Below are positions 7,341-59,730 of a stretch of DNA of 64,000 bases, in pieces (within the stretch, counting starts at the first letter, position 1; each line of letters begins with the position of its first letter). This DNA comes from Macrostomum lignano (lineage: Eukaryota). The notes beneath the pieces were generated by a model. The model did not search any database, was not told the DNA's origin, and saw only the letters and a list, made by a program, of their open reading frames with translations. Position numbers and translations under genes: made by a program. The DNA is taken from positions 6,491-70,490 of the forward strand of contig NIVC01002846.1 in the NCBI GenBank assembly GCA_002269645.1, in the 5' to 3' direction.

Positions 7341-7355
7341 GCCAACCCCCTTGCC

Positions 7356-36900: not shown

Positions 36901-39359
36901 GGTTTGCACTTGGAGACACAATGGATGGGCAGGATGGCCATGTTAATATTGAATGGATTTGCACTCAGAGACATGGTGGGTGGCCATGTTAATAATATTG
37001 GAACTTATACTATAGGCATAGCTATCATGTATATAATCATCAATATAAAATGTGTGTTCTGTAGGGCTCTTTCATATGCAAATTGTGGCTTAGTGGATAA
37101 GTTAATTGCCTTGTGATTGCATGAAAAGGTTTGAATCTCAATTGGTTAGAGTTTAAAAATTTTAAATTTCTTAAAATTAAATTAATTTATTTTTTTAAGA
37201 ATAACACTAAATCTTAAAGTGTGGCCACAATTATATATATATAGCTACAAAAAAGAAATTTTTTTCAATATATATTGGCCACACTTTGTCATGAGTTAAA
37301 CATTATACAGCCTTACTAAAGCTAGTGACATTTGTAGTGACATTTCCTACCTAACAAGGCAATAACTAAACTAAATATAGCCCAATAAGCTTTCTTAGTA
37401 CATAATATTAAGGCTAAATAAATAAACAATTAAAACACAATACCTATTGTCCCATCTTATAAATGACAAGGAAGGCTAGTAATGGGGTAGGCACTAGCTA
37501 CCCTCATACCCTTGGCTTTAATAAAGCTATATAATATTTAACTCATGACAAAGTGCAATCAATATGTATTGAAAAAAAATTATTTCTTTTCAATAGCTAC
37601 ATATATATATTGGGCCACACTTTAAGACTTAGTGTTACTCTTAAAAATTTAATTTAATTTGTTATTTTATCTTAATTAAAAAAACTTAAACAGTTCAAGA
37701 TGCAAAAATTTCTATTCACTAAAAAAATTTCAAACTAATAAAAAAACTAACCACTTGAGAATTGAACCTTTTTACATGCAATCACAAGGCATTGACTTAT
37801 CCACTTAGCTACCATACATGCGCAACCTTGTGAATCACTCGGCTGTTTCTACTGGCAACACACACATGTAAGTCGCTATTGGCTGAGAGCAGTCACGTGA
37901 CTACTATTCCATCCAATAGCAACTTATATGTGTATGTTGCCAATGAAATGGCTGGGTGAATCCCTAGGTTATGCTCAAGTATGTTAGCTACCATTGGCTT
38001 GTTAGAGAGCCCTATAGAAAATGCATTTTATATCAATGATCCATACTCAGGAATTTTCCCGCGTGCGCAAGCCACACTAAAATTTTGGCATGCAAAGTTG
38101 GCGTGCAAATAGGGGTCTCAAGCCACGCCTAAATTTTCAGCGTACAAGTTTTTTACTTGGCGTGTAACCTTGGCGTGCAATTACAAACTGACAGTATATC
38201 AACAAGTCAGATATAGATGTATACACTATATATATACAATATATAAAGTTAAACGTGAACAATTGAATTTGAATATTGATTAAACCAACTAGTTGAGGCT
38301 ACAGCCTAGCCTACAGCCAGGCCTACACTCTACAGCCTACATTAAAATTAAAATATCCAATAACTTCTAAACACTCTTATTTTGTGACTCTTGTAGACTT
38401 TTAGTTTATTTGTTTCTTGAAATGTGAAGAAAAAGTTTTTGATACTCACTATGTTCTTTGTAGCGAATTTCCTTTTTTATATAAACTTTGTTTAACGTAA
38501 ATAGAAAATTTATTTAAAAATAGTATCTAATACGGTTAATATTCAAATCAAGAATGCAAATACAATTTTTGGCGTACATGATTTTTGGTATTCAAGATTT
38601 TTGGCATGCAACAGAAACGTCATGTTAAGGGTTTTAAAAAATTGGCGTACATTGGCGTGCACCAAGGATTTTTCCATAAATTGATTCCTGTGTGCACTTG
38701 CCACCTTCCTGACTATGGTCAATGATTATAACCATGCCTATAAGCTCAAATATTATAGACATGGCTGCCATGCCTATAAGTTCTAATATTAAAGACATGA
38801 CTACTATGTCTATAAGCTCTATACTTATAGACATGGCCACAATGCCTATAAGTACTCCAAAAAGTTATTTGTTTGTAAAAGTAAAAGTAAATAAAAGATA
38901 AAAAATAAAAAGTTAAAGATAAAATTTTGTTGCACAATCTGTCAATTATATTTTTAGCTTAATTGCAAAATTTATAATATTTTTCTATAATTTTTCCATC
39001 CTAGCCTAGCATTATCTTAAAATTATAAAAATAGTCATTGGCAAAAATGCTTAGCAAAATTTAGCAAACTAAAAGACACTTGCCAAAATTAATCAGTCAG
39101 TTGCCAGTCATTAGGCCTAGTTTTGATAACCAAACTATTGTGGGGAGTATTATATTAGTAATGATATTGAATATTGTCATTGACATCAGTATTAATATGA
39201 TTAAAACAATATTATCTTAAATTTTAAAACATTCCTAATGTTTTTGCATTTGATTAGTATAATACAAATATTAAAACAAATTTAACCAACCTGATCCAAG
39301 CATTTTAGCTGTTCAATAGGATACACTACTTTATCACACCCAGCACACCTTTTGTCCAT
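30925..39359 (-). CDS. LASP1: LIM and SH3 domain protein (LASP): LIM, nebulin repeats, Q/P/Y linker, SH3; 6 exons
   Basis: Exons 39359-39291 ([23 protein letters not shown]), 34556-34462 ([30 protein letters not shown]), 34366-34279, 34198-34094, 32906-32307 and 31098-30925 (RCYRALYAY...[21 protein letters not shown]). All splice phases are consistent. Confidence 0.95.
31130..32030. repeat. 24-bp minisatellite (CACACCCCCAATTACACCTGACTG)n in LASP intron 5
   Basis: Direct reading; it explains the GVQSGVIG and CAVRCNWG ORFs. Confidence 0.95.
32350..32690 (-). repeat. Coding 18-bp tandem repeat encoding (Y/H)QQQPQ in LASP exon 5
   Basis: It lies inside the spliced frame between the nebulin repeat and the SH3 domain. 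Confidence 0.9.
32960..34040. repeat. 31-bp minisatellite (GGGTGAGACTGACACTTGAGGAACATCC[A/G]GT)n in LASP intron 4
   Basis: Direct reading. Confidence 0.95.
36150..36990. repeat. 46-bp minisatellite (GCACTTAGAGACACAATGGATGGCCATGTTAATATTGAATAGGTTT)n in LASP intron 1
   Basis: Direct reading; the units contain no CpG. Related degenerate units occur at ~35380-35460, ~36005-36110 and ~38730-38860. Confidence 0.92.
37035..38040. mobile_element. Decayed inverted-repeat element with tRNA-like A/B-box segments and an internal hairpin
   Basis: 37085-37320 is approximately the reverse complement of 37510-37815. Outer ends 37035-37070 and 38005-38040 also match. There is an internal palindrome at 37845-37935 centred on CACGTG. 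Confidence 0.65.
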
Positions 39360-42074: not shown

Positions 42075-45000
42075 TCACATGGCAGTCATGTTCTCCATGG
42101 CATAGTTGGGAACGCCGTTGTGGTGGTGCTGCTTCATGTGGTTGAACCGGTCGTAGTTGATGGCCACCTCCGGCAGCATCTCGGAGGCACCGATTTCTGG
42201 CACGGCGTTGTCTGTTAAAAACGAAAAGTGGAGCCAGGTTTTATTGAACTTCGGGAGTACTGTGTCTGAGAGCTGCATTACTGCAGTATAAGTAATTTGT
42301 ATTCCAGGGGATGAAAAGAAACTCAGACTGAACTGCACTAATCGTCCTTCTCACCTTCCTTCCAGCCGTGGCCGTAGGCAGTCAGAGGATAGGCCATCTC
42401 GCCGTGCTTAGGGAAATCCAGACCTGAAATTGGGAAACGTTAGGAAAAGACTCTATGAACTTTTCACGCCCTCACGACCAACTTTTATGTGCAGCGTTGA
42501 ACCAGAGGCTTCAGGAAGCCTTTGAACAAAGGAAACTCTCACCTTTGATCTCGTACTCCCTGCTGACTCGGAACACCTTGAGCAGGCGAAGTGCCGAACA
42601 CGATGATGGAGACGCCGCCGCTCCACGCCGTGATGGCCAGAACGCCGACGAGCTGCACGGCCAGGTCGAGTCCGCTCTGCTGGTCGAAGGTCATCACGAT
42701 GCCCCGGCTGCGGTGCAGGAAGGCTACCGCGATGACGCCCCAGAGACCTCCGCCGTAGTGCACGGCCACCGCGTCAAGCGGGTCGTCGATCTTGAGCGCC
42801 AGCAGCAGCATGGACCAGCAGGTGTAGGAGATGGCGGCGAAGAAGCCGATGATGCAGGCGCCCCACGGATAGACGACGTCGCAGCCGGCGCAGATGGCCA
42901 CCATGCCGGCCAGGCCGCCGTTGATTGTCTGCAGCAGCGACCAGTGCGGTCCGCGGATGCGCCCGAGCAGCAGGGTGGCAAAGGCAGCGACGCTGCCGCT
43001 GAGGATCGTGTTGACCATCGCGATGGCCACGACAGAGCCGTCTCCTGAATTCGAGATCGATAGCTGGCTGCCGCCGTTGAAGGCGAAGAAGCCGAAGAAC
43101 AGGATGAAGCCGCCGAGAGAGGCGAGCGGCACCGAGTGGCCGCGGATATCGAGCGGCTTCTTGGTTTCGTCGTCGAAGCGTCCGATTCGCGGGCCGAGGA
43201 TGGCCGCCGCCACGAAAGCTGCGCAGCCTCCGGTGACGTGGACGACTCCGGAGCCGGCGAAATCCTGGAGATTGGAGACATTTCATCAGGACTTTGAATT
43301 TGAATTTGAGTGGAAAGTCGTTTTTGTAGGAAAATACATAATTTTGAGTTGCTTTAAGTTGTTTTGACTACTCAGATCCTACATTCTAGAAAGAAAGTTT
43401 GAGTCCAAGATATTATTAGGGGCAGGGAACTATGCAATCCACTCACGTGATAGGTAGAAACCAGGCTGCCGTTCTGAGCCTTGATGCCGATCGAGAGCCA
43501 GCCAATGTCGCCGTCCCAGGCCCAGTGCGACACGATCGGGTAGACGATGCCTGCGGTGCCGGGGTGTTGTTGGCGGTGTGACTTTGCAAATAGATTCTCG
43601 CAATTGGTCTCATTTTTATTTTTGTGGCTCGTATTTTATGAAATCACTGAACAGGGCGGGGCGTATAGTCATAGCTTGAGTCAGATTTTCGAACAGTACG
43701 AATTAAAAGTGCAAAGAGCGCAACCAGAGCCGGTAAATGCAAGTCGATCCATACAGAGCTGCGTTAGTGCCACGTTACACATGTAAAGGGCTCTCGGCAA
43801 CTGCTTATTCAGTGCCTCGGAAAGTTACGCTTGGTCTGGCAGCATCCGTTTCCTCTCCATGCCTTGTGATCGCTATAAACCTGGCCATCTGCCCTACTGT
43901 CTGTGCATAATTAATGCTGAAAACCGCGCCAACGACTTTAGGCGTCGCCTCCCTATGCGTCTCGTTGCCCCTCACTTCCGCCCGCTCCCACATGAAATAC
44001 GCGATCGTGACTCGCGTGATGAAAACAAGCGACACTGCACTGCTCAAAAAGAAGCCAGCTCAGTAGTTATATTTGCATTAATATCTATCTACGGTATACT
44101 TCTAAGCATAATTAATATTGTTAGCGAGTCTTAGTTTATGCAGGTATGCTGAGAAAAAGATAGAAGGCATCCTTACTTCTATTTCATTGCGACAGCACAG
44201 CGCTCCTTCATGCTTTGATAGGAGCGGTGTGAGAACAGCGAGAGATAAAGAGAAAAGAATGCAGATACAGCTTTAAAATGTTGTGGGGCATAAAATCCGT
44301 TTGCCTCAGAGTGCGTTTCACGCAGAGGTCAGAAGAGTATTGCAGCAAAAACTCAAAACTTGATTGCTAGTCTAGCAAGCCGTGCAAAATGCATTGTGAA
44401 GCGGATTGAAAAGGCTCGAGTATGGAGTATGGAACTTGCTAGTTGGCCTTCCATCTCTGCCTCATCTCTCTGAGCGGCAACTTCTCTACTCTGGCGGTTC
44501 GGTCCTTCTTTTATTGTTCACTTTTAGCCAAGGCTAAGAGCTTGCAATCTGCAGCCTTTCCTGGGAAGGGGGGACGCTGCAGTCGTATTTGTTATTGCAG
44601 CGCTGGAAACTGGCGAACACGAGACCAAACCAAAAGATGGGCTGGGCAGGGGCGAGGGCTTTGTCACAATTGTGTGCCTTTTGGAAAATTTCTGTTTACT
44701 AAAGACTAAAGAATGCAACTCCGGGGCTGCTCTACATACGATGTCTGTCTGCCCGCCTGCTTAAATATATCTGCAATGCTGGGCGGGCAGGGGGCGGTGC
44801 AATGGGTGGCGCGACCCCCTGTGCAAGTACAGCTGATACTAAAAATCCAAAGAAACGTTAAACAAAGAAGAAAAGAATTATTTTACTCCGTTGCTACTAG
44901 TCTTAACAGTCGTTTCAATCTTTGCGGGCCTTCGGTATCTGTGTCGTTTTCTTCAACAGTGACAGGGTGAAACAAGTCGCCAAGGATGTAATTTTATCTA

Positions 45001-45567
45001 TTATGTTTAGGGAAAGCTTGGGACTTCTTGTATTACTCGCTGCTGTTGAATTGTTGATTGCTAATGCAGACATTTATATTTGTGTAATACTCGTAAATAG
45101 ACAAACGGAAAAGAAGGCTGCTCACCCGTAATGATGAAGGAGTAGGTGATGTAAGCCAGGAACTCGCACCTCTCTGCTACAGCACCGGAAACGATCGTAG
45201 CGGCAGTGGCGGCAAAGACGAACTGGAAGAACCAGTGGGAGAACTTCGATTCGGGCAGGTAGGACATGGCAAAGTAGCCGCTGCCGCAGAACGGGTTTCC
45301 GTTCGGAGCTCCGAACGCCAGGCCGTAGCCGATTACGTAATAGGCGATGCCGCCGATGAACGAGTCCAGGATGTTCTTGATCAGGATGTTTGTAGTATTT
45401 TTCGAACGTACGGCGCCCGCCTCCAGGAAGGCGAAGCCGCACTGCATGAAGTACACGACAATGGCCATGGTGCACAAGAAGAAGGAGTCCAGGGATTCGT
45501 TGGTTCCCCGGATCTGCGTCTTCAGCTCCTGTAGAGTTCCGTTGAGTAATTCGGCAGACGAAGCCAT
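42075..45567 (-). CDS. amt: Ammonium transporter (Amt) copy A, 5 exons, with a 2-nt deletion near the end of exon 3
   Basis: Exons 45567-45126, 43550-43447, 43264-42543, ~42421-42354 and ~42211-42075. Motifs MQCGFAFLEAG, FQFVFAATAATIVSGAVAER, DFAGSGVVH, GFFAFNGGS and DDPLDAVAVH. Exon 3 is 722 nt versus 724 nt in copy B. Confidence 0.9.
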
Positions 45568-46869
45568 GGTGCGTCTTGCTGGTAAACAGCAAAATGAGAG
45601 TCTCGATCAGCCCAGTTCAGGTTGCAACCGCCCTTCTACTCTGCTTTTCAGACTATTGAATTGTCGAAGCAAGTACGTTTTTTTAAATAGACAAACGCTG
45701 CAGCCATTGGTCAAGAAGCCCATGCGGCTCATACGGGAGAGGAGGGTGAAGTGAGAGGGTAGGCTGTTCAGTGTATGCAGACGCAAGCACGAGATCTGGT
45801 CGAAATAAAGCCGCGTGCAGTGAGTTAACTGCGCACACAAAACCCCCATCTCCCACCTCCGATTAATTATTAGCGATCTGAGAAATTCTGTAACTATCAA
45901 GCCGCCGACTCACCAATTAAGGAGAAAGTTTAAGAAATAAAATAGCTCGTAGTTATGAATTTTGTTACGTAGACCGACAGCTCCAACTCTCAGTACGATG
46001 GATGGAGGGTCTCGACTATAGCTAAGGGTGGAGCTCAATTTAGTACTTGTGCCTTGTGGCTTGTAGCTTGAGTAGCAAATCGCTTCTTACCTACTCGCTT
46101 CAGAATAGTTATACAGCTGATTCTCGATTTCACCTTGCATAACTACCTCCCGTGAGGCTTGTACTCGTTTGATGACTGATTTGTCCAGCGGATACTAAAA
46201 ACACCCTAGGAGCATTGACAGAGCGATTGCAACTTCAGCTCACTACGCTGACGCAATGACACTGTTTTCCAGCCTAACTCAGACGCACTGGGTCTGGGGT
46301 GGCGGTTCTCAATGTTGCTGAGTGTACTTTAGCAGCTCGATTGATTGCTCGATGCAATTTGTGTTTGTGCAAGTACCTAAGTTAGACGCAATATTCAAAG
46401 TAGCTTTAACAAAACAAAAGAAAACTGATCATTTACTTGATGCTGTAAACGTTTCATTTAGTTATGGGAAATTGATCATTTTGTGTAGCTGGTGATAGAG
46501 TTATTTTTCATTCCCTTTGCTTCAAGATCGATTGATTAAGCATAAAACAGATGCAATTAAAACAAGAACATCAACATCTAATAGATGCATGTACACTCAC
46601 GGACACACACACTCCGTGGGTGTACATAAAAGACCATAATTACTATACCTAGATGTATTTTCAGCTACTAACATGTAGCTCGTAAGCTGGTCGTTAAATT
46701 GACTTAAGCCACAAGTGACATGCGTTGTAGGGTCTTCGCGGGCAATATTTTCTCTCATATTACAGACGTGAAGAGTAGGCTAGTGTAATTAGTTAATTGA
46801 GGTAAAAAACCTGACGGGCAAACGTCTGGTGGGTAAACATCCAGCGGGAAATCGAGTATATGCGTCGGC

Positions 46870-47115
46870 GGGCAACGTCCGGTGAGCAAACGTCCGGTGA
46901 GCAAACTTCCGGTGAGCAAACTTCCGGTGAGCAAACTTCCGGTGAGCAAACTTCCGGTGAGCAAACTTCCGGTGAGCAAACGTCCGGTGAGCAAACGTCC
47001 GGTGAGCAACGTCCGGTGAGCAAACTTCCGGTGAGCAAACTTCCGGTGAGCAAACGTCCAGTGAGCAAACGTCCAGTGAGCAAACGTCCAGTGAGCAAAC
47101 GTCCGGTGAGCAAAC
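46870..47115. repeat. 15-bp tandem repeat (AAAC[G/T]TCCGGTGAGC)n, probably the subterminal array of a MITE
   Basis: Direct reading; flanked by a duplicated aaacatccagcgggaaa at ~46836 and ~47113. Confidence 0.85.
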
Positions 47116-47808
47116 ATCCAGCGGGAAAATTTCTCACAGGCAAAGACAAACGGGGTGTATCTCGCTTTGCTGTTCAAACATTATCTTATAGATTAATCGA
47201 GAAAACTGATCTGGGTAGCTTTAATCCGTTCGACCCTCGCGCACCGCTCCTCCCACTTCATTCCTCAACCCCAGTCTGCCGTGGCGTAGCTGAGTTGCGT
47301 CACTCGCAGAGATTGAGAGACTTGCCTGCACTCTCAAAAGTGGCGACCACAGACAGAATCTTCTGTGATGGCGATTTTTCGATGATTTTTCAGAAACGAA
47401 TTGACCTGGGTCGTTCTATTAGGCCCCTTTTTTGGGGGGGGGGGCAAAGTCCCTTTATTACGCGTATCTGCAGTGTTCTCTGGACCCTGCAGGCATTCTC
47501 GCGCCTGATGCAGCTTGATGTAAAATGCGTAAGATGAAGGTGCTTAAATAAAGTTTGTTTGAGACTAGTTCGTGTATAAGGCAAGCAGCATTGTGGAACT
47601 CGCAGTAAATAGTAAGTAATTTATTGATTGCCGATAGTGTAAATTAGTTATTGACATGACATGACTGATTTCTTTTTAGTGTCCACGCACTTTTATCTTC
47701 TGAAGCTACAGGCGGAGTAGGTGCATAAAATCCTAATAAAATAGAAGACCTGTTACTATTTTTCACTATCACTGAGTTAATGGTTCACTCATCGTCGAGC
47801 TTTCGAAA

Positions 47809-50720
47809 TCACATAGCAGTAGCATCTTCCATAGCGTCGTTTTGAGCTCCTTTGAGCTGATGGTGGCGAGTCATGTTATGGAAACGGTCGTAGTTGATGA
47901 GCACCTCGGGCAGCATCTCTGTGGCTCCGATCTCCGGCACAACATTGTCTAAAACGATGGCAATAGGATCAGTTGTTTGCTAAACCCTGATTTGTACCGT
48001 CAGTTACAGTTAGTTTAGTTATGCCTAGTTATGCCGTTTCAATGCGTTAGATCAGCATTGAAAATTTTCAAATGTCACCAATGCGAGCTACGGATTAAAA
48101 GAAAAATATAGCATTTTGCAGCCCATTTGGGCTTACGCGCATTTAATTTAATCCAAGATACGTTTGCCAATGTAACAGAGCTTTTGTCTATGGTAGCAAG
48201 GCTGGCGCAGCGGCATTTAATTTGGTCCAAACACTCGTGAGCCATTGGACAAACTCTTGCCTTCTCTCAACCGTCTTCAGGTTGTTGCGCACCGCTGGAA
48301 TGTCAGCGTCTCTACCAGCAATTTTCAGTTACTTTTCCAGAGCTCTGCTGATAGTCGAAATCTGATAACCAACTGGAGCTGTTCCCTCAACTTCTGCTGC
48401 ATTTTCTGAAACGTCAACAAAGGGTTCGTCTCCACTGCATCGAGTAGCAGTTGGACCTGAGGCTCTCGAGCAAATTTCCTTGGCGATTGCCACCCTTTCG
48501 CAGGCAATCTCTGCCGGCAGAGTTTCAAGGCGCTGCTGGATGCTGTAAACCACCTTTTCTTTTACATTCAGCAACCTTGCAATGTCCTTTGGGTGTTTAC
48601 CTCCGTCGAGTGCTTCGATCACAAGCCAATGACATTCGTTCAACAGCCTAGCATATGGTCCACAATTCTGGGACTGAGCTGCAAATGGACTAAATAGACC
48701 AAATTGACGCTTGTTGGACCAAATTAAATGCCGCTGCGCCAGCCTTGCTACCATAGACAAAAGCTCTGTTACTTTGACAAACATATCTTGGGTTAAATTC
48801 AATGCGCGTAAGCCCAAATGGGCTGCAAAAAGCTATATTAAAAACTACGAGCTATGTTTAAAGCCGATTTACATTAGATGCAGGTATGGCACCTGGAGCC
48901 GAAAGCTCACTCACCTTCTTTCCAACCATGGCCGTACGAGGTCAAAGGATAGGCCATTTCTCCATGCTTTGGAAAGTCAAGACCTGTAGAGGTTAATAAA
49001 ATTGAAAATAATAGGAACTGTCTGCCAAAACACCAGCAAAACAAGCAAACTTAGTCATTCACTTCCCACAAAGCTGGCAATCGAAAAACTCCAAAATCGT
49101 CTTTATAACCAAATTGGAATACAGATCAAACATATTCAACGAACTCCGTCCTCTGATTTATTATTGGTCGGCATCAGACTGATTAAAACCAAAAAGTTTC
49201 ATAACCAATCTTAAGCTTCTCACCTTTGATCTCGTACTCCCTGCTGACTCGGAACACCTTGAGCAGGCGAAGGATGCCGAACACGATGATGGAGACGCCG
49301 CCGCTCCACGCCGTGATGGCCAGAACGCCGACGAGCTGCACGGCCAGGAAGAGTCCGCTCTGCTGGTCGAAGGTCATCACGATGCCCTGGCTGCGGTGCA
49401 GGAAGGCTACCGCGATGACGCCCCAGAGACCTCCGCCGTAGTGCACGGCCACCGCGTCAAGCGGGTCGTCGATCTTGAGCGCCAGCAGCAGCATGGACCA
49501 GCAGGTGTAGGAGATGGCGGCGAAGAAGCCGATGATGCAGGCGCCCCACGGATAGACGACGTCGCAGCCGGCGCAGATGGCCACCATGCCGGCCAGGCTG
49601 CCGTTGATTGTCTGCAGCAGCGACCAGTGCGGTCCGCGGATGCGCCCGAGCAGCAGGGTGACAAAGGCAGCGACGCTGCCGCTGAGGATCGTGTTGACCA
49701 TCGCGATGGCCACGACAGAGCCGTCTCCTGAATTCGAGATCGATAGCTGGCTGCCACCGTTGAAGGCGAAGAAGCCGAAGAATAGGATGAAGCCGCCGAG
49801 AGAGGCGAGCGGCACCGAGTGGCCGCGGATGTCGAGCGGCTTCTTGGTTTCGTCGTCGAAGCGTCCGATTCGCGGGCCGAGGATGGCCGCCGCCACGAAA
49901 GCTGCGCAGCCTCCGGTGACGTGGACGACTCCGGAGCCGGCGAAATCCTGTGAGCATTCGGAGATGATGAAGTGATTCTATCAGATATTTGTTTCTCTGA
50001 TTTTCAGTCAGGATCTAATATCAGAAATTTGATTTTGTCCCAAACTGTAGGCCAACGGCAGAATTAAGCCAGATCACTCACGTGAAAAGTGGAGGCCAGA
50101 GCGCCGTTGTGGGCGGTGATACTGACCGACAGCCAGCCAACGCCTGTGTCCCAGACCCAGTGCGACACAATGGGGTAGAGAAAGCCTGCAGTTTGATGCG
50201 TCAAGTGAATGTTAGTTTCCTTAATTAACTTAGTCGTGGGCTACTCACTCGTTTGTGAAAAGTCTCTCTGTTACTCACCTGTGATAACAAAGGAGTAGGC
50301 TATGTAGGCCTTAAAGTCACACCTCTCTGCTACGGCCCCAGAAACAATTGTTGAAGCAGTGGCGGCAAAGACGAACTGGAAGAACCAGTGGGAGAACTTC
50401 GATTCGGGCAGGTAGGACATGGCAAAGTAGCCGCTGCCGCAGAACGGGTTTCCGTTCGGAGCTCCGAACGCCAGGCCGTAGCCGATTACGTAATAGGCGA
50501 TGCCGCCGATGAACGAGTCCAGGATGTTCTTGATCAGGATGTTTGTAGTATTTTTCGAACGTACGGCGCCCGCCTCCAGAAAGGCGAAGCCGCACTGCAT
50601 GAAGTACACGACAATGGCCATGGTGCACAAGAAGAAGGAGTCCAGGGATTCGTTGGTTCCCCGGATCTGCGTCTTCAGCTCCTGTAGAGTTCCGTTGAGT
50701 AATTCGGCAGACGAAGCCAT
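47809..50720 (-). CDS. amt: Ammonium transporter (Amt) copy B, 5 exons, intact
   Basis: Exons 50720-50279, 50185-50082, 49947-49224, ~48984-48915 and ~47948-47809. It has the same intron positions and phases as copy A and an uninterrupted frame. Confidence 0.93.
48105..48840 (-). mobile_element. Internally deleted Tc1/IS630-like transposon with ~125-bp TIRs in Amt-B intron 4
   Basis: 48105-48230 is nearly the reverse complement of 48714-48840, with TA at the outer ends. Internal minus-strand frameshifted fragments ALDGGKHPKDIARLLNVKEKVVYSI, SPRK...AVETNPLLT and PAVRNNLKTVERRQEFVQW resemble the Tc1 HTH region. Confidence 0.75.
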
Positions 50721-52329
50721 GGTGCGTCTTGCTGGTAAACAGCAAAATGAGAGTCTCGATCAGCCCAGTTCAGGTTGTTGCTAAGCAAATCTGCTCAATT
50801 TTTCATCTCCATGCAGTGCAGGTCTCTTTAAACGCTGCCTGAATTAGACAGAAACGGTGTGCTGCAGCCTTTGGTCAAGGTGCAGCCGCGGATCATTAAG
50901 AGGTGGTTGAAGGAGCAGCGTGCATGAAGTAGTTGACTGGTAGAAGAAGCACGTTGGGGGTTTAAACGTCATGCAACCCCTAACCGACGAGGCCACATGC
51001 AACTAAATAGAAGAGCTGAACTGCAACTGCCCTTCCCCCAGATATGTTTGAATGTGAAGGAACAACGTGAGCTCCTAATTTGTTGGTAAGATCCTACAAG
51101 AGCTCCACATGTGTGCTCAGCAACATTGAAAAGTCGCCATCACAAAAGATTCCGTCTGTGGTCGCCACTTTTGAGAGCGCAGGTAAAATCTCTATCGAAA
51201 TGGTTGGCCCGGTGATGATAGACGCTGGTCGAAAGACGCTGCTCGCTGGGGCAGAGGGTCTTTTTTGCCCACTCAAGGTTGGCATAAGTTTACAAGTACT
51301 CGCTTACATCAGACTTAATCAGTTCACTTCGAAAGAGCTGCAGAACTGAGTGAAACTGGAACGCAGTCCATACAAGTTGTGCTGGAGCATTGGAGTTGCT
51401 AAGATTTTTGGGCCTGCACACGAGCGACAGGCAGGCAGTACCAGCCGTATTCTGTAAGAGCATGCGTTACGCAACAGCTACTGTTGCACGTATATCAATT
51501 TACACTCCATCCAGGGACCTGTCACTCCCTTGGCTGACTGGAAGGTCAGAAGAAGGTCATTTGGAGTTGCGTCTCGCTCATGCTGTTTACCAGTGCCGCC
51601 AGTCCCTAGAGAGAGAAATTCTCACGAAGGAATGTGTCCATAATTAAAGGCCAAATGTAATTAGAGCATTCCATAGCATAAATATGAATGCAATTAAATG
51701 CGATAAATGCTGGATTTCCCTTGTCAATTCAGCCTTATGTTGGAACTTTTATAGTTGCTCTCCGTGATAAATTTGAGCAGGAACTCTCGAATAATGACTC
51801 AAGAAGATGGAGAGGAGCTGGGTGTCCCATTTGTCCCACTTCAAAGCAGGCAATGGCGAGGCCAAGTGAAAAAATACGAAATGGCAAAAATGTACTAAAA
51901 AAGGTCAGCACCCGTACGTACAAACGCGCATTACATACGGAAGAGTGTTGCATTGCAGTCTATATAATAAACGGCAGTTTGACGAAAACACAGCGCGGCA
52001 GCCTTGAGCTCAGGCACGTGACACGCAGCAAGCAGCTCAGCTCCCAACTATTCTCATAGCTATGCTGCCACATGCATATATGCTTGCTCTCTCTCTGCCA
52101 ACAATAGCAGAAATAAAATAAGAAAGCAGCCGGTCCCGCCGTTCTTGATCGATGGCAGAGTGAGTTTCCATTGCCGGGGTTTCCCACAGCAGCTCTCAAA
52201 GCAGGCAGAGAGGATAAATGAATTGACACAATGGCCGAATGCAGTTCTCTCGGCAGGAAATGGTCATAGCTACGAGTACCTGAGATAACAGTCAACTTGA
52301 GTCTCCCAGCGCCCTCTGCTTGCCACATA

Positions 52330-54070
52330 GGCGTAGGAACGTTTCAAAAAGTGGGGGATATAGGGGGGAGGGGGCGTACAGGGTGCACGCATTTATATGG
52401 AAAATGCACATTATCATGTACCGATTATTTTCAGAATCGGTGTTGTCAGCACTCATTTTAGCGCCGCAGGCCCCATTTTAGCGCCGCAGGCCCCATTTTA
52501 GCGCCGCAGGCACCCATTTTAGCGCTCACAGGCCCCATTTTTAGCGCCGCAGGCATCCATTTTAGCGCCGCAGGCACCCATTTTAGCGCCGCAGGCACCC
52601 ATTTTAGCGCCGCAGGCCCCATTTTAGCGCCGCAGGCACTCATTTTAGCGCTCACAGGCCCCATTTTTAGCGCCGCAGGCATCCATTTTAGCGCCGCAGG
52701 CACCCATTTTAGCGCCGCAGGCCCCATTTTAGCGCCGCAGGCACTCATTTTAGCGCTCACAGGCCCCATTTTTAGCGCCGCAGGCATCCATTTTAGCGCC
52801 GCAGGCACCCATTTTAGCGCTCACAGGCCCCATTTTTAGCGCCGCAGGCACTCATTTTAGCGCTCACAGGCCCCATTTTTAGCGCCGCAGGCACTTATAT
52901 TAGCGCCGCAGGCACTCATTTTAGCGCTCACAGGCCCCATTTTTAGCGCCGCAGGCACCCATTTTAGCGTCGCAGGCACCCATTTTAGCGCCGCAGGCAC
53001 TCATTTTAGCGCCGCAGGCACCCATTTTAGCGTCGCAGGCACCCATTTTTAGCGCCGCAGGCACTCATTTTAGCGCCGCAGGCACCCATTTTAGCGTCGC
53101 AGGCACCCATTTTAGCGCCGCAGGCACTCATTTTAGCGCCGCAGGCACTCATTTTAGCGCCACAGGCACCCATTTTAGCGCCGCAGGCACTCATTTTAGC
53201 GCTCACAGGCCCCATTTTTAGCGCCGCAAGCACTCATTTTAGCGCTCACAGGCCCCATTTTTAGCGCCGCAGGCACCCATTTTAGCGGCGCAGGCACTCA
53301 TTTTAGCGCTCACAGGCCCCATTTTAGCGCCGCAGCCACCCATTTTAGCGCCGCAGGCACCCATTTTAGCGCCGCAGGCACCCATTTTAGCGCCGCAGGC
53401 ACTCATTTTAGCGCTCACAGGCCCCATTTTAGCGCCGCAGCCACCCATTTTAGCGCCGCAGGCACCCATTTTAGCGCCGCAGGCACCCATTTTAGCGCCG
53501 CAGGCACTCATTTTAGCGCCGCAGGCACCCATTTTAGCGCCGCAGGCACTCATTTTAGCGCCGCAGGCACCCATTTTAGCGCCGCAGGCACTCATTTTAG
53601 CGCCGCAGGCACCCATTTTAGCGGCGCAGGCACTCATTTTAGCGCTCACAGGCCCCATTTTAGCGCCGCAGGCACCCATTTTAGCGCCGCAGGCACCCAT
53701 TTTAGCGCCGCAGCCACCCATTTTAGCGCCGCAGCCACCCATTTTAGCGTCGCAGGCACCCATTTTAGCGCCGCAGGCACCCATTTTAGCGCCGCAGGCA
53801 CCCATTTTAGCGCCGCAGGCACCCATTTTAGCGCCGCAGGCACCCATTTTAGCGCCGCAGCCACCCATTTTAGCGTCGCAGGCACCCATTTTAGCGCCGC
53901 AGGCACCCATTTTAGCGCCACAGACGCTATGTTTTGTCACCCTGCAGCAAAATGCATTGACGCAGAGCAGCAAAAATAAAAAATAAGAGTAAAAAATAAG
54001 GAAAAAGTCTACATTTTGTGTTTAAAAAGTGGGGGGCGGGGGCCATGGCCCCACTGCCCCCCCCGTTCAA
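52330..54070. mobile_element. Probable MITE-like element enclosing a 21-bp minisatellite (CATTTTAGCGCCGCAGGCACC)n at 52450-53925
   Basis: The left end reads ggcgtaggaacgtttcaaaaagtggggg. The right end reads aaaaagtgggggg...ccatggccccactgccccccccgttcaagcc, a partial inverted match to GGCGTAGGAACG. The array itself is unambiguous; the element boundaries are inferred. Confidence 0.55.
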
Positions 54071-54929: not shown

Positions 54930-57756
54930 TCACAGCTTGGCCTCCCGGCCGCGCACGTGGCGAGCCCGCAGCCGCCAGACGTCCTCGTAGGACAGCTTGG
55001 CGTCGGGGCCAAGACGCTGGCGGACGATTTCGTCAACCTCATCGGCGATCTTCTGCTGATGGGTGCCAGTGACGTCGATGTATTCCACGTGCGCGGAGGC
55101 GTAGTGGCAGGAGATGGCCTTACGGTAGCCCTCAGTCCGGTTCGCGCCGCTGCCGTGGATCAGCAGGGGGTGGAACAGCACCGTGTCGCCGGCGGACATC
55201 TCCAGGTAGGTCAGGGGCAGGGAGCCCGGGTCCAGGTCCACGATGCCGTGGAAGGCTTTGTTCACCTTGCCCTGTGGATTAGGGATTATCGATGAGAACT
55301 AGCCTGATTAGAGTTTGGATTTGGGGAGGTGAATTAAGATTTGGATTAGTGGTGTCTGTAAATTTTGATTTGGATTAGCCGTGTTTATAAGACCGGGATT
55401 TGGATTAGCCGTGTTTATAAGACTGGGATTTGGATTAGCGGTGTTTTTTAAGAATGGGATTTGGATTAGGAGAACGAGTGTTTAAATGAGAACTTGGAGC
55501 ATGAAAATTTAGATTGGAGAAGAACAAAATAATCCCAGAAAAGCTTTTCAGAATCCCCAAACCTCACCCCCCAATTTGGATAATCGTGCGGCAGCAGCCG
55601 GCCGTCCAGGTGCGAACCGGGCACGGCCACCAGGCAGCCGTTGGCCCGCGTGACCGGCTCCAAGGCGGTCCAGGCGCAAACCACCCTGTCCGCCGGGCGG
55701 AACGGGAAATAGTACAGGTCCTGGTGCAGCGGGTGCCTGCTGCTCAGGGTGCCGCGGTCGGGCGGCTTGCTGATCAGCATTGTGTGCATCGCCGCGACGT
55801 CCGGCCCGATGATGTCCACGACGTAGTCCAGCACCTGGCGGGAGCGGATATGGATTCTTCAGGAGGCGGATATGGATTCTTCAGGGTGCGGAAACGGATT
55901 CTTCAGGGAGCAGATATGGATTCTTCAGGGAACAGATATGGATTCTTCAGGGAGCAGATATGGGTTCTTCAGGGAGCAGATATGGATTCTTCAGGGGGCA
56001 GATATAAATTCTTCAGGGAGCAGATATGAATTATTCAGGGAGCAGATATGAATTATTCAGGGAGCAGATATGAATTCTTCAGGGAGCAGATATGAATTCT
56101 TCAGGGAGCAGATATGAATTCTTCAGGGAGCAGATATGAATTCTTCAGGGGGGATATGGATTCTTCAGGGAGAGGATTTGAGTTCCCCAGGGGACAGCTA
56201 ACAATCGCACCTGCGGCAGCTGGCAGTAGGCAAAAAGCCGATCGTCATTCTGGAAGTCCTGCAGCTTGTACACCGCCCGCTCACCGCCGCCGCTGTCGTC
56301 CAAGGCGCTGACGTCGCGCATCACCGTCAGGCCTGGCGGGCGCTGGGCGCCGGCGCAGATTTCCTGGAAACGGGCGCTGCCGACCGGCGGAAAAAATAAA
56401 TTGTGAAGATTTCATAAAAGCAGCTCAGATAAGAAATAACATGTAGCGTTACAGTCCATAGTATCTGGGGCACCAAGATGAGTATCGGGGGTGCCAAGAT
56501 GAGTATCAGGGGCAACAAGATGAGCATTGGGGTGTCAAGATGAGTATCGGGGGGGGGGGCAAGATGAGTATCGGGGGGGCAAGATGAGTATCAGGGGCAA
56601 CAAAATGAGCATTGGGGAGAGGCGCCAAGATGAGCATCGGGGGTGCCAAGATGAGTATCGGGGGAGAGGGGGGGGCAAGATGAGCATCAGGAGGGGGTGA
56701 CAAGATGAGTGTGTCGGGGGGGGCAAGATGAGCATCAGGAGGCGCCAAGATGAGTATCAGGAGGGGGGGGGCAAGATGAGCATCGGGAGGCGCCAAGATG
56801 AGTATCAGGAGGGGGGGGCAAGATGAGCATCAGGAGGCGCCAAGATGAGTATCAGGAGGGGGGGCAAGATAAGCATCGGGAGGCGCCAAGATGAGTATCA
56901 GGAGGGGGGGGCAAGATGAGCATCGGGAGGCGCCAAGATGAGTATCAGGAGGGGGGGCAAGATGAGCATCAGGAGGCGCCAAGATGAGTATCAGGAGGGG
57001 GGGCAAGATAAGCATCGGGAGGCGCCAAGATGAGTATCAGGAGGGGGGCAAGATGAGCATCGGGAGGCGCCAAGATGAGTATCGGGGGGGGGCAAGATGA
57101 GCATCGGGAGGCGCCAAGATGAGTATCAGGAGGGGGGGGCAAGATGAGCATCGGGAGGCGCCAAGATGAGTATCAGGAGGGGGGGGGGCAAGATGAGCAT
57201 CGGGAGGCGCCAAGATGAGTATCAGGAGGGGGGGGGCAAGATGAGCATCAGGAGGCGCCAAGATGAGTATCAGGAGGGGGGGGGCAAGATGAGCATCGGG
57301 GGTGCCGAGATGAGTATCTGGGGGGGGCCCAAGATGAGCATCGGGGGGAGGCGCCAAGGTGAGCATAAGGGACACCAAACATGTAGTGAAGGTAGCCAAG
57401 ATAGTTGCTAGATAAAGAAAAGATTTAACGCAGACGCCAAAATACAAGCTGGTTGTCTGAGCCTTTAAAAAGCTTGCATATTTTTAAAAGTGCAGACAAA
57501 ACCCAGGGGTTATTAAAATCGGCAGTTAGATCTGCAGCAAGGGCAGATTGATAAGGAGGATATCAGCTGACTTGGAAGCCAAGGCAAAGAAGGCAAAGTC
57601 AGGTTGCACGCACATGTAATCTCGCACGCAGTGCTCGGGCACCAGGCCTTTCACCACAATAAAGCCGTTCTTTTCGTAGAACAGCCGGTCAGATGGGCTG
57701 AGCTGCCCGCCGCCGACAGAGTATCTGAGTGGCGTCTCTGCCATGCCTGCTGGCAT
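54930..57756 (-). CDS. PHYH: Phytanoyl-CoA dioxygenase (peroxisomal 2OG-Fe(II) oxygenase), 4 exons
   Basis: Exons 57756-57614, 56376-56211, 55834-55568 and 55271-54930, phases consistent. Motifs [51 protein letters not shown] and [15 protein letters not shown]. The protein ends in AKL. Confidence 0.93.
55315..55470. repeat. ~30-bp repeat (GATTTGGATTAGCCGTGTTTATAAGACCGG) x3-4 in PHYH intron 3
   Basis: Direct reading. Confidence 0.75.
55840..56175. repeat. 22-bp minisatellite (GGAGCAGATATGGATTCTTCAG)n filling PHYH intron 2
   Basis: Direct reading; the array abuts the splice acceptor. Confidence 0.92.
56465..57365. repeat. Dimeric G-run minisatellite (CAAGATGAGTATCAGGAGn / CAAGATGAGCATCGGGAGGCGC) in PHYH intron 1
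   Basis: Direct reading; G-runs of 5-10 nt. Confidence 0.92.
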
Positions 57757-57824: not shown

Positions 57825-58675
57825 GATGGAGACAGGGAGTCTGAGAGGAGGGAGAGGGGGAAGGGGATTTGGGCAAAAGGGCGAAGGGAGAAAGGAGAGC
57901 CAGGGAGAGAATGATGGACAGAGAGGAGTAGGGGAGAGAGAGAGAGGGGAACGAGAGGAGATGGACAAACGCTGAGAGGAAGATGGGGAGAGGGAGTTGG
58001 GAGAGGGAGAGGGGAGAGGGAGATGGGGAGAGGGAGATGAGGGAGAGGGAGATGAGGGAGAGGGAGATGAGGGAGAGGGAGAGGGGGAGAGGGAGATGGG
58101 GAGAGGGAGATGGGGGAGAGGGAGATGGGGAGAGCGATTAGGGAGATAGGGATAATAGAGGGAGATGAGGGACAGGGAGATGGGGAGAGGGAGATGAGGC
58201 AGAGGGACATGGGGAGAGGGAGATGAGGGAGAGGGAGATGGGGAGAGCGATTAGGGAGATAGGGATAATAGAGGGAGATGAGGGACAGGGAGATGGGGAG
58301 AGAGAGATGAGGCAGAGGGACATGGGGAGAGGGAGATGAGGGAGAGGGAGATGGGAGAGGGAGAGGGGGAGAGGGAGATGGGGAGAGGGAGATGGGGGAG
58401 AGGGAGATGGGGAGAGGGAGATGGGAGAGGGAGAGGGGGAGAGGGAGATGGGGAGAGCGATTAGGGAGATAGGGATAATAGAGGGAGATGAGGGAGAGGG
58501 AGATGGGGAGAGGGAGATGGGAGAGGGAGGGGGGAGGGAGATGGGGAGAGGGAGATGGGAGAGGGAGATGGGAGAGGGAGATGGGGAGAGCGATTAGGGA
58601 GATAGGGATAATAGAGGGAGATGAGGGACAGGGAGATAGGGAGAAGGGAGAGGGACATAGGAGAGGGAAAGTCTG
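57825..58675. repeat. Polypurine (GA-rich) tract built of GGGAGAGGGAGAT units
   Basis: The + strand is almost entirely G/A, with a recurring cgattagggagatagggataatag subunit. Confidence 0.92.
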
Positions 58676-58984
58676 ATAGGAAAGATAAGGAGAGGAAGTG
58701 CAGGATGAAAAGTATATTTCAGCCCAATTTTACTCAATAAAATATAAATGCTGCCAGACAAGGTGAAAAATGCACAGAGGCTCGCAAATAATTTCCAGAG
58801 CCTGGGCTTGGCTGCACTTTTTTATTTATTAATAAAATTTTGCTAAAATTGCACCAGCAGAGCAAACTTTGCCAGAAATGTCATAACAGGCTTAAACAAT
58901 ATCATAATTGCAATTTATTTTCATACCGGAAAAGGACTCTACGAAAAGTGAGATTTTAGGCTTAGGTTGGAGGACTTTACAATT

Positions 58985-59700: not shown

Positions 59701-59730
59701 ATAATGAGAATGCGATGGAATCAGAACCGG

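What the first reader, a model, noticed from the sequence alone, without database searches (positions are those of the whole stretch)
42075..50777. Tandem Amt paralogs are mosaics of ~99%-identical tracts and anciently diverged exons: patchy gene conversion
Seen: 45203-45624 vs 50356-50777 (5'UTR plus most of exon 1) match at 421 of 422 nt, and exon 3 (724 nt) differs at about 7 sites plus one indel. Yet the last 77 nt of exon 1 and exons 2, 4 and 5 are strongly diverged (exon 2 GIVYPIVSHWAWDGDIGW vs GFLYPIVSHWVWDTGVGW; exon 4 nearly the same peptide with many synonymous changes), and introns are unalignable. Tract 2 stops exactly at both splice sites; tract 1 stops inside the exon. The homogenised tracts have the GC-rich wobble style of copy A, suggesting A-to-B transfer. 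Inference: recent ectopic or cDNA-templated conversion, producing a chimeric channel with shared pore regions but distinct loop and C-tail.
Basis: partly seen in the sequence, partly recalled or inferred. Interest (0 to 1): 0.72.

Follow-up and report, generated by a model that had tools for sequence, protein, structure and literature searches.

The report
Exon-limited gene conversion between tandem Amt genes

Summary
Two head-to-tail Amt genes lie on the minus strand: A at 42075-45624 and B at 47809-50777, each with 5 exons. They share two near-identical tracts. Tract 1 is 422 nt (57 nt of 5'UTR plus 365 nt of CDS) with 1 difference. Tract 2 is the whole of exon 3 (722/724 nt) with 8 substitutions and a 2-bp indel.

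The rest of the coding sequence is about 25% diverged, with dS of 1.1 or more. Introns and 3' flanks show no detectable homology. Third-codon-position differences are 4/362 inside the tracts and 63/128 outside (p=4e-38). The same exons differ normally from a related species' transcript (dS 0.5-1.1), so selection cannot explain the identity.

The best explanation is interlocus gene conversion confined to the only long stretches of uninterrupted homology. Exons 1 and 3 are long and intron-depleted. The escaped exons are 69-140 nt.

Additions and corrections:
- The "indel" is a 2-bp frameshift in copy A that gives a premature stop, so A is either a very young pseudogene or an assembly error.
- A-to-B direction is only weakly supported.
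- cDNA templating is not supported.

This is a known phenomenon and a new example of it.

The parts
42075..45624 (-). Amt copy A (downstream copy), from the 5' edge of tract 1 to the stop codon. Exons: 45567-45126, 43550-43447, 43264-42543, 42423-42355, 42211-42075. Reading frame broken in exon 3.
   Evidence: Exon model with canonical AG/GT at every junction. tblastn with copy B. Frameshift seen.
47809..50777 (-). Amt copy B (upstream copy), intact 492-aa ORF. Exons: 50720-50279, 50185-50082, 49947-49224, 48983-48915, 47948-47809.
   Evidence: Spliced ORF of 1479 nt. Pfam PF00909 E=8e-114 over profile positions 2-399 of 399. Matches solved Amt structures, E down to 2.7e-59.
45203..45624 (-). 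Tract 1 in copy A: 57 nt upstream of the ATG plus the first 365 nt of CDS.
   Evidence: 421/422 identical to 50356-50777. dS 0.012.
50356..50777 (-). Tract 1 in copy B.
42543..43264 (-). Tract 2 in copy A: all of exon 3 (722 nt).
   Evidence: 8 substitutions and a 2-nt deletion relative to B. dS 0.016.
49224..49947 (-). Tract 2 in copy B: all of exon 3 (724 nt).
42591..42592 (-). Site of the 2-bp deletion in copy A. B has TC at 49274-49273. The result is a frameshift after ...IIVFG and a stop 14 nt into exon 4.
   Evidence: Base-by-base alignment. Translation.
45126..45202 (-). Unconverted last 77 nt of exon 1 in copy A (B: 50279-50355). The identity drops abruptly inside the exon.
   Evidence: 21/77 differences beginning immediately at 45202.
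45697..45751 (-). Old, diverged promoter homology in copy A: a 55-nt block of about 75% identity containing GACCAATGGCTGCAGC (CCAAT-box-like), about 130 nt upstream of the ATG.
   Evidence: Smith-Waterman score 23 against a shuffle mean of 10.6, z=8. Sequence read.
50861..50912 (-). The matching promoter block in copy B, about 141 nt upstream of the ATG.
48105..48839 (.). Transposon-like insertion inside intron 4 of copy B: 126-nt terminal inverted repeats (95%) around an ORF with a weak helix-turn-helix match. It accounts for much of that intron's 966 nt, against 143 nt in A.
   Evidence: Weak HTH_29 hit, below Pfam's cut-off.

Best explanation
A and B are old tandem (head-to-tail) duplicates of an Amt-family ammonium channel gene. 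Neutral sequence between them is saturated: introns, 3' flanks and most of the 5' flank no longer align. Short exons and the exon 1 tail are about 25% diverged.

DNA-templated interlocus (ectopic) gene conversion still operates, or operated very recently (dS about 0.01-0.02). It acts only where uninterrupted homology is long enough to support strand invasion and heteroduplex formation. Those places are the two long, intron-depleted exons: exon 1 with its 5'UTR (about 500 nt) and exon 3 (724 nt). Exons of 69-140 nt, flanked by non-homologous introns, fall below that length and have escaped. The tracts therefore end at splice sites because homology ends there.

Once a segment escapes, its mismatches further suppress conversion. 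That would explain the sharp internal boundary in exon 1.

The homogenised sequence is probably A-type, but this is weakly supported.

Shown here: the mosaic, its statistical significance, homogenised synonymous sites, the region-specific tree conflict, and the link with exon length.

Inferred: the recombination mechanism, the direction of transfer, and whether conversion is recurrent or was one or two events.

Copy A has since acquired a 2-bp frameshift in the converted exon. It is either a very young pseudogene or null allele, or the deletion is an assembly error.
For: - dS(A,B) is 0.012 in tract 1 and 0.016 in exon 3. It is 1.1 or saturated elsewhere.
- Third-position differences are 4/362 vs 63/128, p=4e-38. 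Permutation p<=5e-5.
- The same exons are not intrinsically invariant. A vs P0001 has dS of 1.15 in tract 1 and 0.53 in exon 3.
- Tree conflict: A+P0001 at about 85% in exon-1-tail plus exon 2, and A+B at 100% in the tracts. M. lignano falls outside all three.
- Introns and 3' flank have no homology (z<1.5). A conserved promoter block (z=8) shows that the old duplication extended upstream of the tract edge.
- Only the 442-nt (+UTR) and 724-nt exons are homogenised. The 104-, 69- and 137/140-nt exons are not.
- Exon 3 is long because it lacks two introns present in M. lignano, and more that are present in Haliotis.
- The two tracts do not differ significantly in divergence (Fisher p=0.17). This fits either recurrent conversion at equilibrium or events close in time.
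- Published work describes the same exon-biased mosaic pattern and divergence-dependent escape: PMC3966223, and bioRxiv 10.1101/2025.10.29.685298.
Against: - Tract 1 starts abruptly 57 nt upstream of the ATG, in sequence with no detectable homology for the next 70 nt or so. A purely homology-bounded tract end is not obviously expected there. It needs either a 'terminator' indel just upstream or an end-joining finish.
- Both ends of tract 2 lie within about 10 nt of the splice sites. For a single event that is a tight fit. It is easier to explain if many events have accumulated.
- There is no independent read, transcript or population evidence for this species.
- The exon 4+5 tree is unresolved.
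- Direction could not be settled because no B-type ortholog was found.
Confidence: 0.78

Rival explanations
1. Reverse-transcript (cDNA) templated conversion. A spliced mRNA of one copy was reverse-transcribed and recombined with the other gene in a single event, with patchy mismatch repair. On this view the tracts end at exon edges and at the mRNA 5' end.
For: - Tract 2 ends within about 10 nt of both splice sites.
- Tract 1 begins 57 nt upstream of the ATG. The related species' transcript contigs carry 56 and 42 nt of 5'UTR, so -57 could be near the mRNA 5' end.
- The two tracts have statistically equal divergence.
- Exon 3 itself is intron-depleted relative to M. lignano and Haliotis. From general knowledge, intron loss is usually attributed to RT-mediated recombination.
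Against: - The last 77 nt of exon 1 and all of exon 2 lie between the tracts and are unconverted.
- All four introns are retained in both copies.
- The 3' exons 4 and 5 are unconverted, and cDNAs primed from the poly(A) tail should favour them.
- The TTTAAA-like boxes lie 55-65 nt upstream of the tract edge, not the usual 30 nt or so, and the nearest upstream AG is at different offsets in A and B. The edge is therefore not demonstrably a TSS or a trans-splice site.
- Exon-bounded tracts are equally expected from genomic templating when introns lack homology.
Confidence: 0.1
2. Assembly or polishing artefact. Reads from one copy were cross-mapped during consensus or polishing and overwrote the other copy's exons 1 and 3. 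The true copies would then be more diverged.
For: - Cross-mapped short reads would be clipped at exon edges, which would mimic exon-bounded identity.
- The window contains two frame-disrupting indels in otherwise conserved genes: Amt copy A and the Abhydrolase_3 gene near 27330-27340. This could hint at imperfect consensus quality.
- No independent data for this species could be found.
Against: - Reads cannot cross-map at the 25% divergence seen in neighbouring exons. An artefact would therefore need exons 1 and 3 to be unusually similar already, which itself implies conversion.
- Nine copy-specific substitutions are retained inside the tracts.
- Tract 1 ends inside an exon with no change in mappability.
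- A collapse or mis-join would carry introns along.
- Three other long ORFs are intact: ferroportin, the 494-aa membrane protein and Amt B.
Confidence: 0.05
3. A and B are recent duplicates (about 1% diverged), and the divergent exons were imported into one of them from a third, distant paralog elsewhere in the genome.
For: P0001 shows that other A-like sequences exist. The exon 4+5 tree is unresolved.
Against: - If the duplication were recent, the introns directly flanking exon 3 and the flanks of exon 1 would be about 99% identical. All four intron pairs and the 3' flank are unalignable, and intron lengths differ greatly: 1575/182/119/143 in A vs 93/134/240/966 in B.
- The promoter block is about 75% identical, not 99%.
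- There is no third Amt copy in the window.
Confidence: 0.02
4. No transfer at all. Extreme purifying selection or codon bias on the nucleotide sequence of exon 3 and the 5' part of exon 1 has kept them identical since the duplication.
For: Exon 3 has very high GC3 (0.88) and a lower dS to P0001 (0.53) than other regions. Some extra synonymous constraint, or GC-biased conversion, therefore exists.
Against: The same regions show 31-45% third-position differences between A and P0001, against 0.8-1.2% between A and B. The 57-nt 5'UTR is identical between A and B but has no visible similarity to the P0001 5'UTR.
Confidence: 0.01

Closest known systems
Exon-specific gene conversion between human RHD and RHCE (Rh proteins belong to the Amt/MEP/Rh superfamily).
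   Same: Closely linked paralogs of the same transporter superfamily. Individual exons are exchanged and give hybrid genes. Other exons stay distinct, possibly maintained by selection against conversion.
   Different: RHD and RHCE are young (over 90% identical overall, with alignable introns) and lie in opposite orientation. Here the paralogs are saturated at neutral sites and head-to-tail, and conversion is restricted to the two long exons.
Mosaic divergence by interlocus gene conversion in tandem paralogs, e.g. HMA4 in Arabidopsis halleri (bioRxiv 10.1101/2025.10.29.685298)
   Same: Tandem transporter paralogs. Coding exons are homogenised while long introns escape and keep the time signal. 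Conversion frequency falls as divergence rises, which produces a mosaic.
   Different: In HMA4 the short introns are co-converted and total divergence is a few percent. Here every intron has escaped completely, and so have the short exons.
Interlocus gene conversion in Caenorhabditis paralogs (review PMC3966223), and the GOT1 paralogs of Tigriopus (PMC3728101; title and abstract seen only)
   Same: Spatially conflicting similarity: near-identical modules next to fully diverged flanks. Tracts run from tens of bases to about 1 kb. Islands that resist conversion are interpreted as functionally diverging.
   Different: Those reports often find introns inside tracts, because Caenorhabditis introns are very short. 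There is no link to intron-depleted long exons.
Pseudogene-gene conversion pairs such as CYP21A1P/CYP21A2 (from my own knowledge)
   Same: A frameshifted tandem copy remains in conversion contact with an intact copy. Disabling or repairing mutations can therefore move between them.
   Different: No transfer of the frameshift has been observed here, and the frameshift itself is unverified.
RT-mediated (cDNA) gene conversion and intron loss, e.g. Derr and Strathern 1993 in yeast (from my own knowledge)
   Same: Tract ends coincide with exon ends. The converted exon is intron-depleted compared with outgroups.
   Different: Introns between and around the tracts are retained, the intervening exon 2 is untouched, and there is no 3' bias.

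Membership tests
Amt/MEP/Rh ammonium transporter family (Pfam PF00909) | Full-length match to the family profile | tested here: met
   Copy B: E=8e-114, 380.9 bits, profile positions 2-399 of 399. Top homologs are animal 'ammonium transporter 1' proteins.
Amt/MEP/Rh ammonium transporter family (Pfam PF00909) | Sequence similarity to solved Amt/Mep structures across the 11-TM core | tested here: met
   Matches 8qj3, 6eu6, 2b2f, AmtB (1xqe/1u7g) and Mep2, with E from 2.7e-59 to 5e-22 over residues about 27-436.
Amt/MEP/Rh ammonium transporter family (Pfam PF00909) | Conserved pore signature: DFAGSxVVH (Asp plus first pore His) and the second pore His in VHxxGG | tested here: met
   D183, H191 and H351 (copy A numbering) are invariant columns in the 12-sequence alignment. 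Their identification with AmtB D160, H168 and H318 is from my own knowledge.
Amt/MEP/Rh ammonium transporter family (Pfam PF00909) | Ammonium transport activity | not testable with these tools
   Needs yeast mep-deletion complementation or oocyte electrophysiology.
Interlocus (ectopic) gene conversion between paralogs | Stretches of identity significantly longer than expected from the overall density of differences (GENECONV-type test) | tested here: met
   Best-fragment score 611 vs a maximum of 308 in 20,000 permutations. Third positions only: 218 vs 125. p<=5e-5.
Interlocus (ectopic) gene conversion between paralogs | Synonymous sites homogenised, not only amino acids, and the same sites free to vary between species | tested here: met
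   dS(A,B) is 0.012 and 0.016 in the tracts and at least 1.1 outside. dS(A,P0001) is 1.15 and 0.53 in the same tracts.
Interlocus (ectopic) gene conversion between paralogs | Phylogenetic incongruence between converted and unconverted segments | tested here: met
   Exon-1-tail plus exon 2: A+P0001 in 83-86% of bootstraps. Tracts: A+B in 100%. Exons 4+5 on their own are unresolved.
Interlocus (ectopic) gene conversion between paralogs | Flanking non-coding sequence diverged (old duplication), which excludes a recent duplication | tested here: met
   All four intron pairs and the 3' flank give z<1.5. The promoter block is only about 75% identical.
Interlocus (ectopic) gene conversion between paralogs | Identified donor and recipient | tested here: inconclusive
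   GC3 and the polarised differences favour A-type sequence in B. No B-type ortholog was found.
Interlocus (ectopic) gene conversion between paralogs | Pattern present in independent reads or individuals (not an assembly artefact), with shared polymorphism | not testable with these tools
   No reads or second assembly are available. The protein collection holds no sequence from this species.
RT-mediated (cDNA-templated) conversion | Tract ends coincide with exon ends or the transcript start | tested here: inconclusive
   Both exon 3 ends lie within about 10 nt of the splice sites. The -57 edge cannot be tied to a TSS or trans-splice acceptor. The other end of tract 1 lies inside exon 1.
RT-mediated (cDNA-templated) conversion | Adjacent exons co-converted and/or introns removed in the recipient; bias toward the 3' end | tested here: not met
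   Exon 2 lies between the tracts and is 74% identical. All introns are retained. Exons 4 and 5 are unconverted.
Pseudogene (copy A) | Disabling mutation in an otherwise conserved ORF | tested here: met
   A 2-bp deletion at 42591/42592 gives a frameshift and a stop in exon 4. No other defect was found: all splice sites are canonical, and exons 4 and 5 still encode conserved peptide in the original frame.
Pseudogene (copy A) | The mutation is real in the organism, and functional product is lost | not testable with these tools
   Needs reads, PCR and cDNA.

The most novel reading that the evidence does not exclude
Both tracts come from one RNA-templated event. A spliced transcript of copy A was reverse-transcribed and used to repair copy B. 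On this reading, identity begins at the mRNA 5' end (-57), fills exon 3 exactly from splice site to splice site, and is of equal age in both tracts. The intron-depleted state of exon 3 in both copies would be a legacy of the same kind of RT-mediated recombination. This would be a rare natural footprint of cDNA-mediated gene conversion in an animal germ line, without intron loss.
Probability: 0.1. Interest if true: 0.65.

Novelty: new member of a known kind. Interest (0 to 1): 0.33.

Why it matters
This is a very clean natural example of how exon-intron architecture decides which parts of old duplicates stay in recombinational contact. Only the long, intron-depleted exons are homogenised, and every short exon has escaped.

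Practical consequences:
- Gene trees or dS estimates built on whole Amt coding sequences in this lineage will badly misdate the duplication. Only exons 2, 4 and 5 and the exon 1 tail carry the true signal.
- Short-read mapping, variant calling and expression quantification will confuse the two copies in exons 1 and 3.
- The two proteins share the pore-forming core. They differ in TM4 with the following external loop, and in the cytosolic C-tail, which is the regulatory part of Amt proteins (my own knowledge). Any sub-functionalisation should map there.
- If copy A's frameshift is real, an intact gene sits next to a broken copy with which it exchanges exactly that exon. The defect can then be repaired or spread by conversion.

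None of this changes current understanding of gene conversion.

Tried and rejected
The three homology searches returned nothing above 83% identity, so this species is not in the protein collection.

2. Searched for a B-type ortholog with a chimeric query made only of the unconverted B segments. It gave only 41 word candidates and nothing relevant. An exon-3-only query, meant to surface short same-species fragments, gave a best hit of 62%. Per-exon trees could therefore use only P0001, M. lignano and distant outgroups.

3. A full NJ bootstrap with Biopython timed out. I replaced it with four-point quartet bootstraps.

4. Tested whether the -57 edge is the duplication breakpoint. Rejected: a significant block of old homology lies further upstream.

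5. Tested whether -57 is a TSS or a trans-splice acceptor. The TTTAAA-like boxes are 55-65 nt upstream, and the nearest AGs lie at different offsets in A and B. Inconclusive.

6. Looked for a third Amt copy in the window. None found.

7. Checked whether the 63-nt inverted repeat flanking copy B belongs to a larger or multi-copy element. There are only those two short copies in the window, and it remains unexplained.

8. Looked up Lingula (P0047) for intron positions. It is not on record, so Haliotis was used alone.

9. Considered selection, a recent duplication with import of exons, and assembly collapse. These are rejected as set out under the rival explanations.

Full report
**What is there**

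The region holds two ammonium-transporter (Amt) genes on the minus strand, arranged head to tail, each with five exons.
- The upstream copy, B, has exons 50720-50279, 50185-50082, 49947-49224, 48983-48915 and 47948-47809. It encodes an intact 492-aa protein.
- The downstream copy, A, has exons 45567-45126, 43550-43447, 43264-42543, 42423-42355 and 42211-42075. All its splice sites are canonical.
- 2,184 nt separate B's stop codon from the 5' edge of A's tract 1.
- B matches Pfam PF00909 over the whole profile (E=8e-114) and matches solved Amt/AmtB/Mep2 structures (E down to 2.7e-59).
- The Asp and the two pore histidines are invariant in a 12-species alignment.
- The closest named relative is a Macrostomum lignano Amt at 70% identity. 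Molluscan and other invertebrate Amt1 proteins follow at 60% or below. The window therefore most likely comes from a macrostomid-like flatworm.
- There is no third Amt copy in the window.

**Check of the observation**

BLAST of the two loci finds five colinear blocks and nothing else.

| Segment | A vs B |
|---|---|
| 45203-45624 vs 50356-50777 (57 nt upstream of ATG + 365 nt CDS) | 421/422 identical |
| Last 77 nt of exon 1 | 21 differences |
| Exon 2 | 74.0% |
| Exon 3 | 98.9% (8 substitutions, one 2-nt indel) |
| Exon 4 | 79.7% (one amino-acid change) |
| Exon 5 | 74.5% |

- None of the four intron pairs, nor the 3' flanks, scores above dinucleotide-shuffled controls.
- Intron lengths are quite different: 1575/182/119/143 nt in A against 93/134/240/966 nt in B.
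- Permuting the differences never reproduces the observed identical fragments, using all sites or third codon positions only (p<=5e-5).
- Third-position differences are 4/362 inside the tracts and 63/128 outside (p=4e-38).

The 'one indel' in exon 3 is a 2-bp deletion in copy A. A reads GGCA--CTTCG between 42592 and 42591, and B has TC at 49274-49273.
- It shifts the frame after ...GGVSIIVFG and leads to a stop 14 nt into exon 4.
- As assembled, A would lose the end of TM11 and the whole cytosolic C-tail.
- Everything else about A looks functional. Splice sites are intact, and exons 4 and 5 still encode conserved peptide in the original frame, with dN 0.07 to the ortholog.
- The lesion must therefore be very recent, younger than the last homogenisation of that exon, or it is a consensus error.
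- A second conserved gene in the window, an Abhydrolase_3 esterase, also has a frame break between its HGGG and GDSAGG motifs near 27330-27340. It looks like an 8-nt imperfect tandem duplication or a 1-nt deletion.
- Two frame breaks in about 7 kb of coding sequence leaves both readings open: real decay or imperfect consensus.

**Why it is gene conversion**

- Synonymous divergence between A and B is 0.012 in tract 1 and 0.016 in exon 3. It is 1.1 in the exon-1-tail plus exon-2 block and beyond saturation in exons 4+5.
- The identity is not due to constraint. A transcript contig from another sample (P0001, Logan runs SRR28338163/4, 491 aa, intronless) differs from A at 45% of third positions in tract 1 and 31% in exon 3 (dS 1.15 and 0.53). 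Its 5'UTR shows no visible similarity to the shared 57-nt leader.
- Quartet bootstraps put A with P0001 in the exon-1-tail plus exon-2 block (83-86%), whereas A and B pair in 100% of replicates in the tracts. M. lignano falls outside all three sequences.
- The duplication is therefore old. It probably predates the split from the P0001 species, although I cannot strictly exclude that P0001 is a third paralog of the same species. The tracts are recent.
- The reverse scenario, a recent duplication with foreign exons imported, is excluded because the introns that touch exon 3 on both sides are unalignable.

**Why these exons**

All four introns sit at positions shared with M. lignano. Three of them are also shared with the mollusc Haliotis.
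- M. lignano has two further introns inside the region matching exon 3, at about residues 296 and 344/345.
- Haliotis has about four there, plus two inside the region matching exon 1.
- In this lineage exons 1 and 3 are therefore long, intron-depleted exons (442 nt plus UTR, and 724 nt), while the other exons are 69-140 nt.
- Exactly the two long exons are homogenised.

This is what homology-length-dependent recombination predicts. Uninterrupted homology of several hundred nt supports strand invasion and heteroduplex formation. A 70-140-nt exon embedded in non-homologous introns does not. Tracts ending at splice sites then need no special explanation, because homology ends there. The same logic appears in the literature I read: exon-biased tracts, escape of diverged introns, and conversion frequency falling with divergence (PMC3966223; HMA4 model, bioRxiv 10.1101/2025.10.29.685298).

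**The 5' edge**

Identity stops abruptly 57 nt upstream of the ATG.
- It is not the breakpoint of the original duplication. A 55-nt block of about 75% identity, containing a CCAAT-box-like GACCAA(T/A)GGCTGCAGC, lies 130-141 nt upstream of each ATG (z=8). TTTAAA-like boxes follow it. Both copies thus keep the ancestral core promoter.
- Between that block and -57 nothing aligns. The tract end therefore sits next to non-homologous sequence.
- Three readings are possible: a 'terminator' indel that stopped formerly continuous homogenisation, a repair event finished by end joining, or the mRNA 5' end if a cDNA was the template.
- The TTTAAA-like boxes are 55-65 nt from the edge rather than about 30 nt, and the nearest upstream AGs are at different offsets in A and B. 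I cannot tie the edge to a transcription start or a trans-splice site.

**cDNA or genomic template**

In favour of a cDNA:
- Exon 3 is filled to within about 10 nt of both splice sites.
- The two tracts are statistically equally old (1/422 vs 8/722, p=0.17).
- The related transcript's 5'UTR is about as long as the shared leader.
- The lineage has lost introns in exon 3.

Against a cDNA:
- The 181 nt of mRNA between the tracts (exon 1 tail and exon 2) are unconverted.
- No intron was removed.
- The 3' exons are untouched.
- One tract end lies inside an exon.

Recurrent genomic conversion at a mutation-conversion balance explains both the equal divergence and the complete filling of the homologous block. 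I put the cDNA reading at about 10%.

**Direction**

Copy A's unconverted exons have GC3 of 0.78-0.82, and B's have 0.56-0.65. The tracts have 0.79 and 0.88.
- However, P0001 shows the same exon-specific GC3 (0.77 and 0.89), and GC-biased conversion would raise GC in any case. The composition argument is therefore weak.
- A somewhat better hint comes from the within-tract differences that P0001 can polarise. Four of five are derived on B: CTG>CTA, GGC>GGT, CGG>CAG and GAC>TTC. Most run GC-to-AT, as if GC-rich sequence were decaying toward B's local composition, or as if they were small unconverted B patches.
- Exon 3's amino-acid distance to P0001, scaled by the P0001-M. lignano distance (0.45), is nearer the A-type value (0.39) than the B-type value (0.88) of the exon 2 block. 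Exons 4+5 do not discriminate.
- No B-type ortholog could be found. Direction remains probable, not shown.

**Artefact**

I cannot examine reads. A pure artefact is unlikely for four reasons.
- Reads do not cross-map at 25% divergence.
- Nine copy-specific substitutions persist inside the tracts.
- One boundary lies within an exon.
- A collapse or mis-join would carry introns along.

Polishing could at most have exaggerated a similarity that already needed conversion to exist.

**Consequences for the proteins**

A (if repaired) and B would be 92% identical overall. They share the N-terminal three helices and the whole core from the DFAGSGVVH motif to TM11. They differ in the segment encoded by the exon 1 tail and exon 2 (18/60 residues) and in the C-tail (15/67 residues). 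From my own knowledge of AmtB, the first segment is TM4 and the following external loop, next to the conserved HW(V/A)W ammonium-recruitment tryptophan. The tail is the regulatory region in Amt proteins. dN/dS in the unconverted block is about 0.16, so there is no sign of positive selection, only of long independent evolution.

**Verdict**

This is a real, statistically overwhelming and tidy example of interlocus gene conversion between old tandem paralogs. It carries a useful lesson about exon length, plus an unverified frameshift in one copy. The phenomenon is well known, so it is a new member of a known kind and of modest interest.

Noticed in passing
window 27108-28363 (+), break near 27330-27340: An Abhydrolase_3-type esterase gene changes reading frame between its HGGG motif and its GDSAGG motif. 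The sequence gcttacgggcgtacggcatcgat looks like an 8-nt imperfect tandem duplication, or alternatively a 1-nt deletion. This is the second frame-disrupting indel in a conserved gene in this window.
   Followed up: partly
window 48105-48839, inside intron 4 of Amt copy B: A transposon-like insertion with 126-nt terminal inverted repeats (95% complementary). They flank a 162-aa ORF with a weak helix-turn-helix match that is below Pfam's cut-off.
   Followed up: partly
window 47322-47384 and 51124-51186: A 63-nt inverted repeat (90%) brackets copy B. One arm lies about 425 nt downstream of its stop, and the other about 350 nt upstream of tract 1. There are only these two copies in the window. Its meaning is unknown: a dispersed repeat fragment, or a relic of how the copy arose.
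   Followed up: partly
window 45697-45751 and 50861-50912 (- strand): A conserved CCAAT-box-like promoter block (about 75% identity) is shared by both Amt copies. It is followed by TTTAAA-like boxes. Both copies seem to keep the ancestral core promoter.
   Followed up: yes
L003 (M. lignano NIVC01000906.1) 13672-16227; L004 (Haliotis rufescens): The region matching the window's exon 3 is split by two extra introns in M. lignano and by about four in Haliotis. Exon 1 is split by two more in Haliotis. The window lineage has intron-depleted long exons.
   Followed up: yes
window 6864-8954 (+): An intact ferroportin (FPN1, PF06963, E=9e-123) lies in a single long ORF. The 5' part of that ORF reads through a 12-nt minisatellite (6933-7378), so the true start is probably downstream.
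   Followed up: no
window 24223-25707 (+): An intact 494-aa single-exon ORF that looks like a multi-pass membrane protein and has no Pfam match.
   Followed up: no
window-wide, e.g. 1723-2512, 3328-3840, 3974-4900, 29812-30640, 30996-32050, 32265-32786, 32839-34040, 36104-37047, 46821-47174, 52403-54000, 55774-56213, 56458-57331, 57844-58668, 58903-59721: The density of minisatellites is extraordinary (periods 10-48 nt, often hundreds of nt long). They create long spurious ORFs and strong local GC and AT skews. One of them (46821-47174, period 15) lies between the two Amt genes.
   Followed up: no
window 12161-15322: A cluster of nested inverted repeats (arms 66-160 nt, 76-89% complementary) in an AT-rich stretch. 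It may be a large foldback or transposon-derived structure.
   Followed up: no
exon 3 of copy B, 49350-49349 (A: 42667-42666): Two adjacent substitutions (GAC>TTC, Asp>Phe) at a position where A, P0001 and M. lignano all have Asp. This is either a multinucleotide mutation in B or a tiny unconverted patch of B's original sequence.
   Followed up: partly
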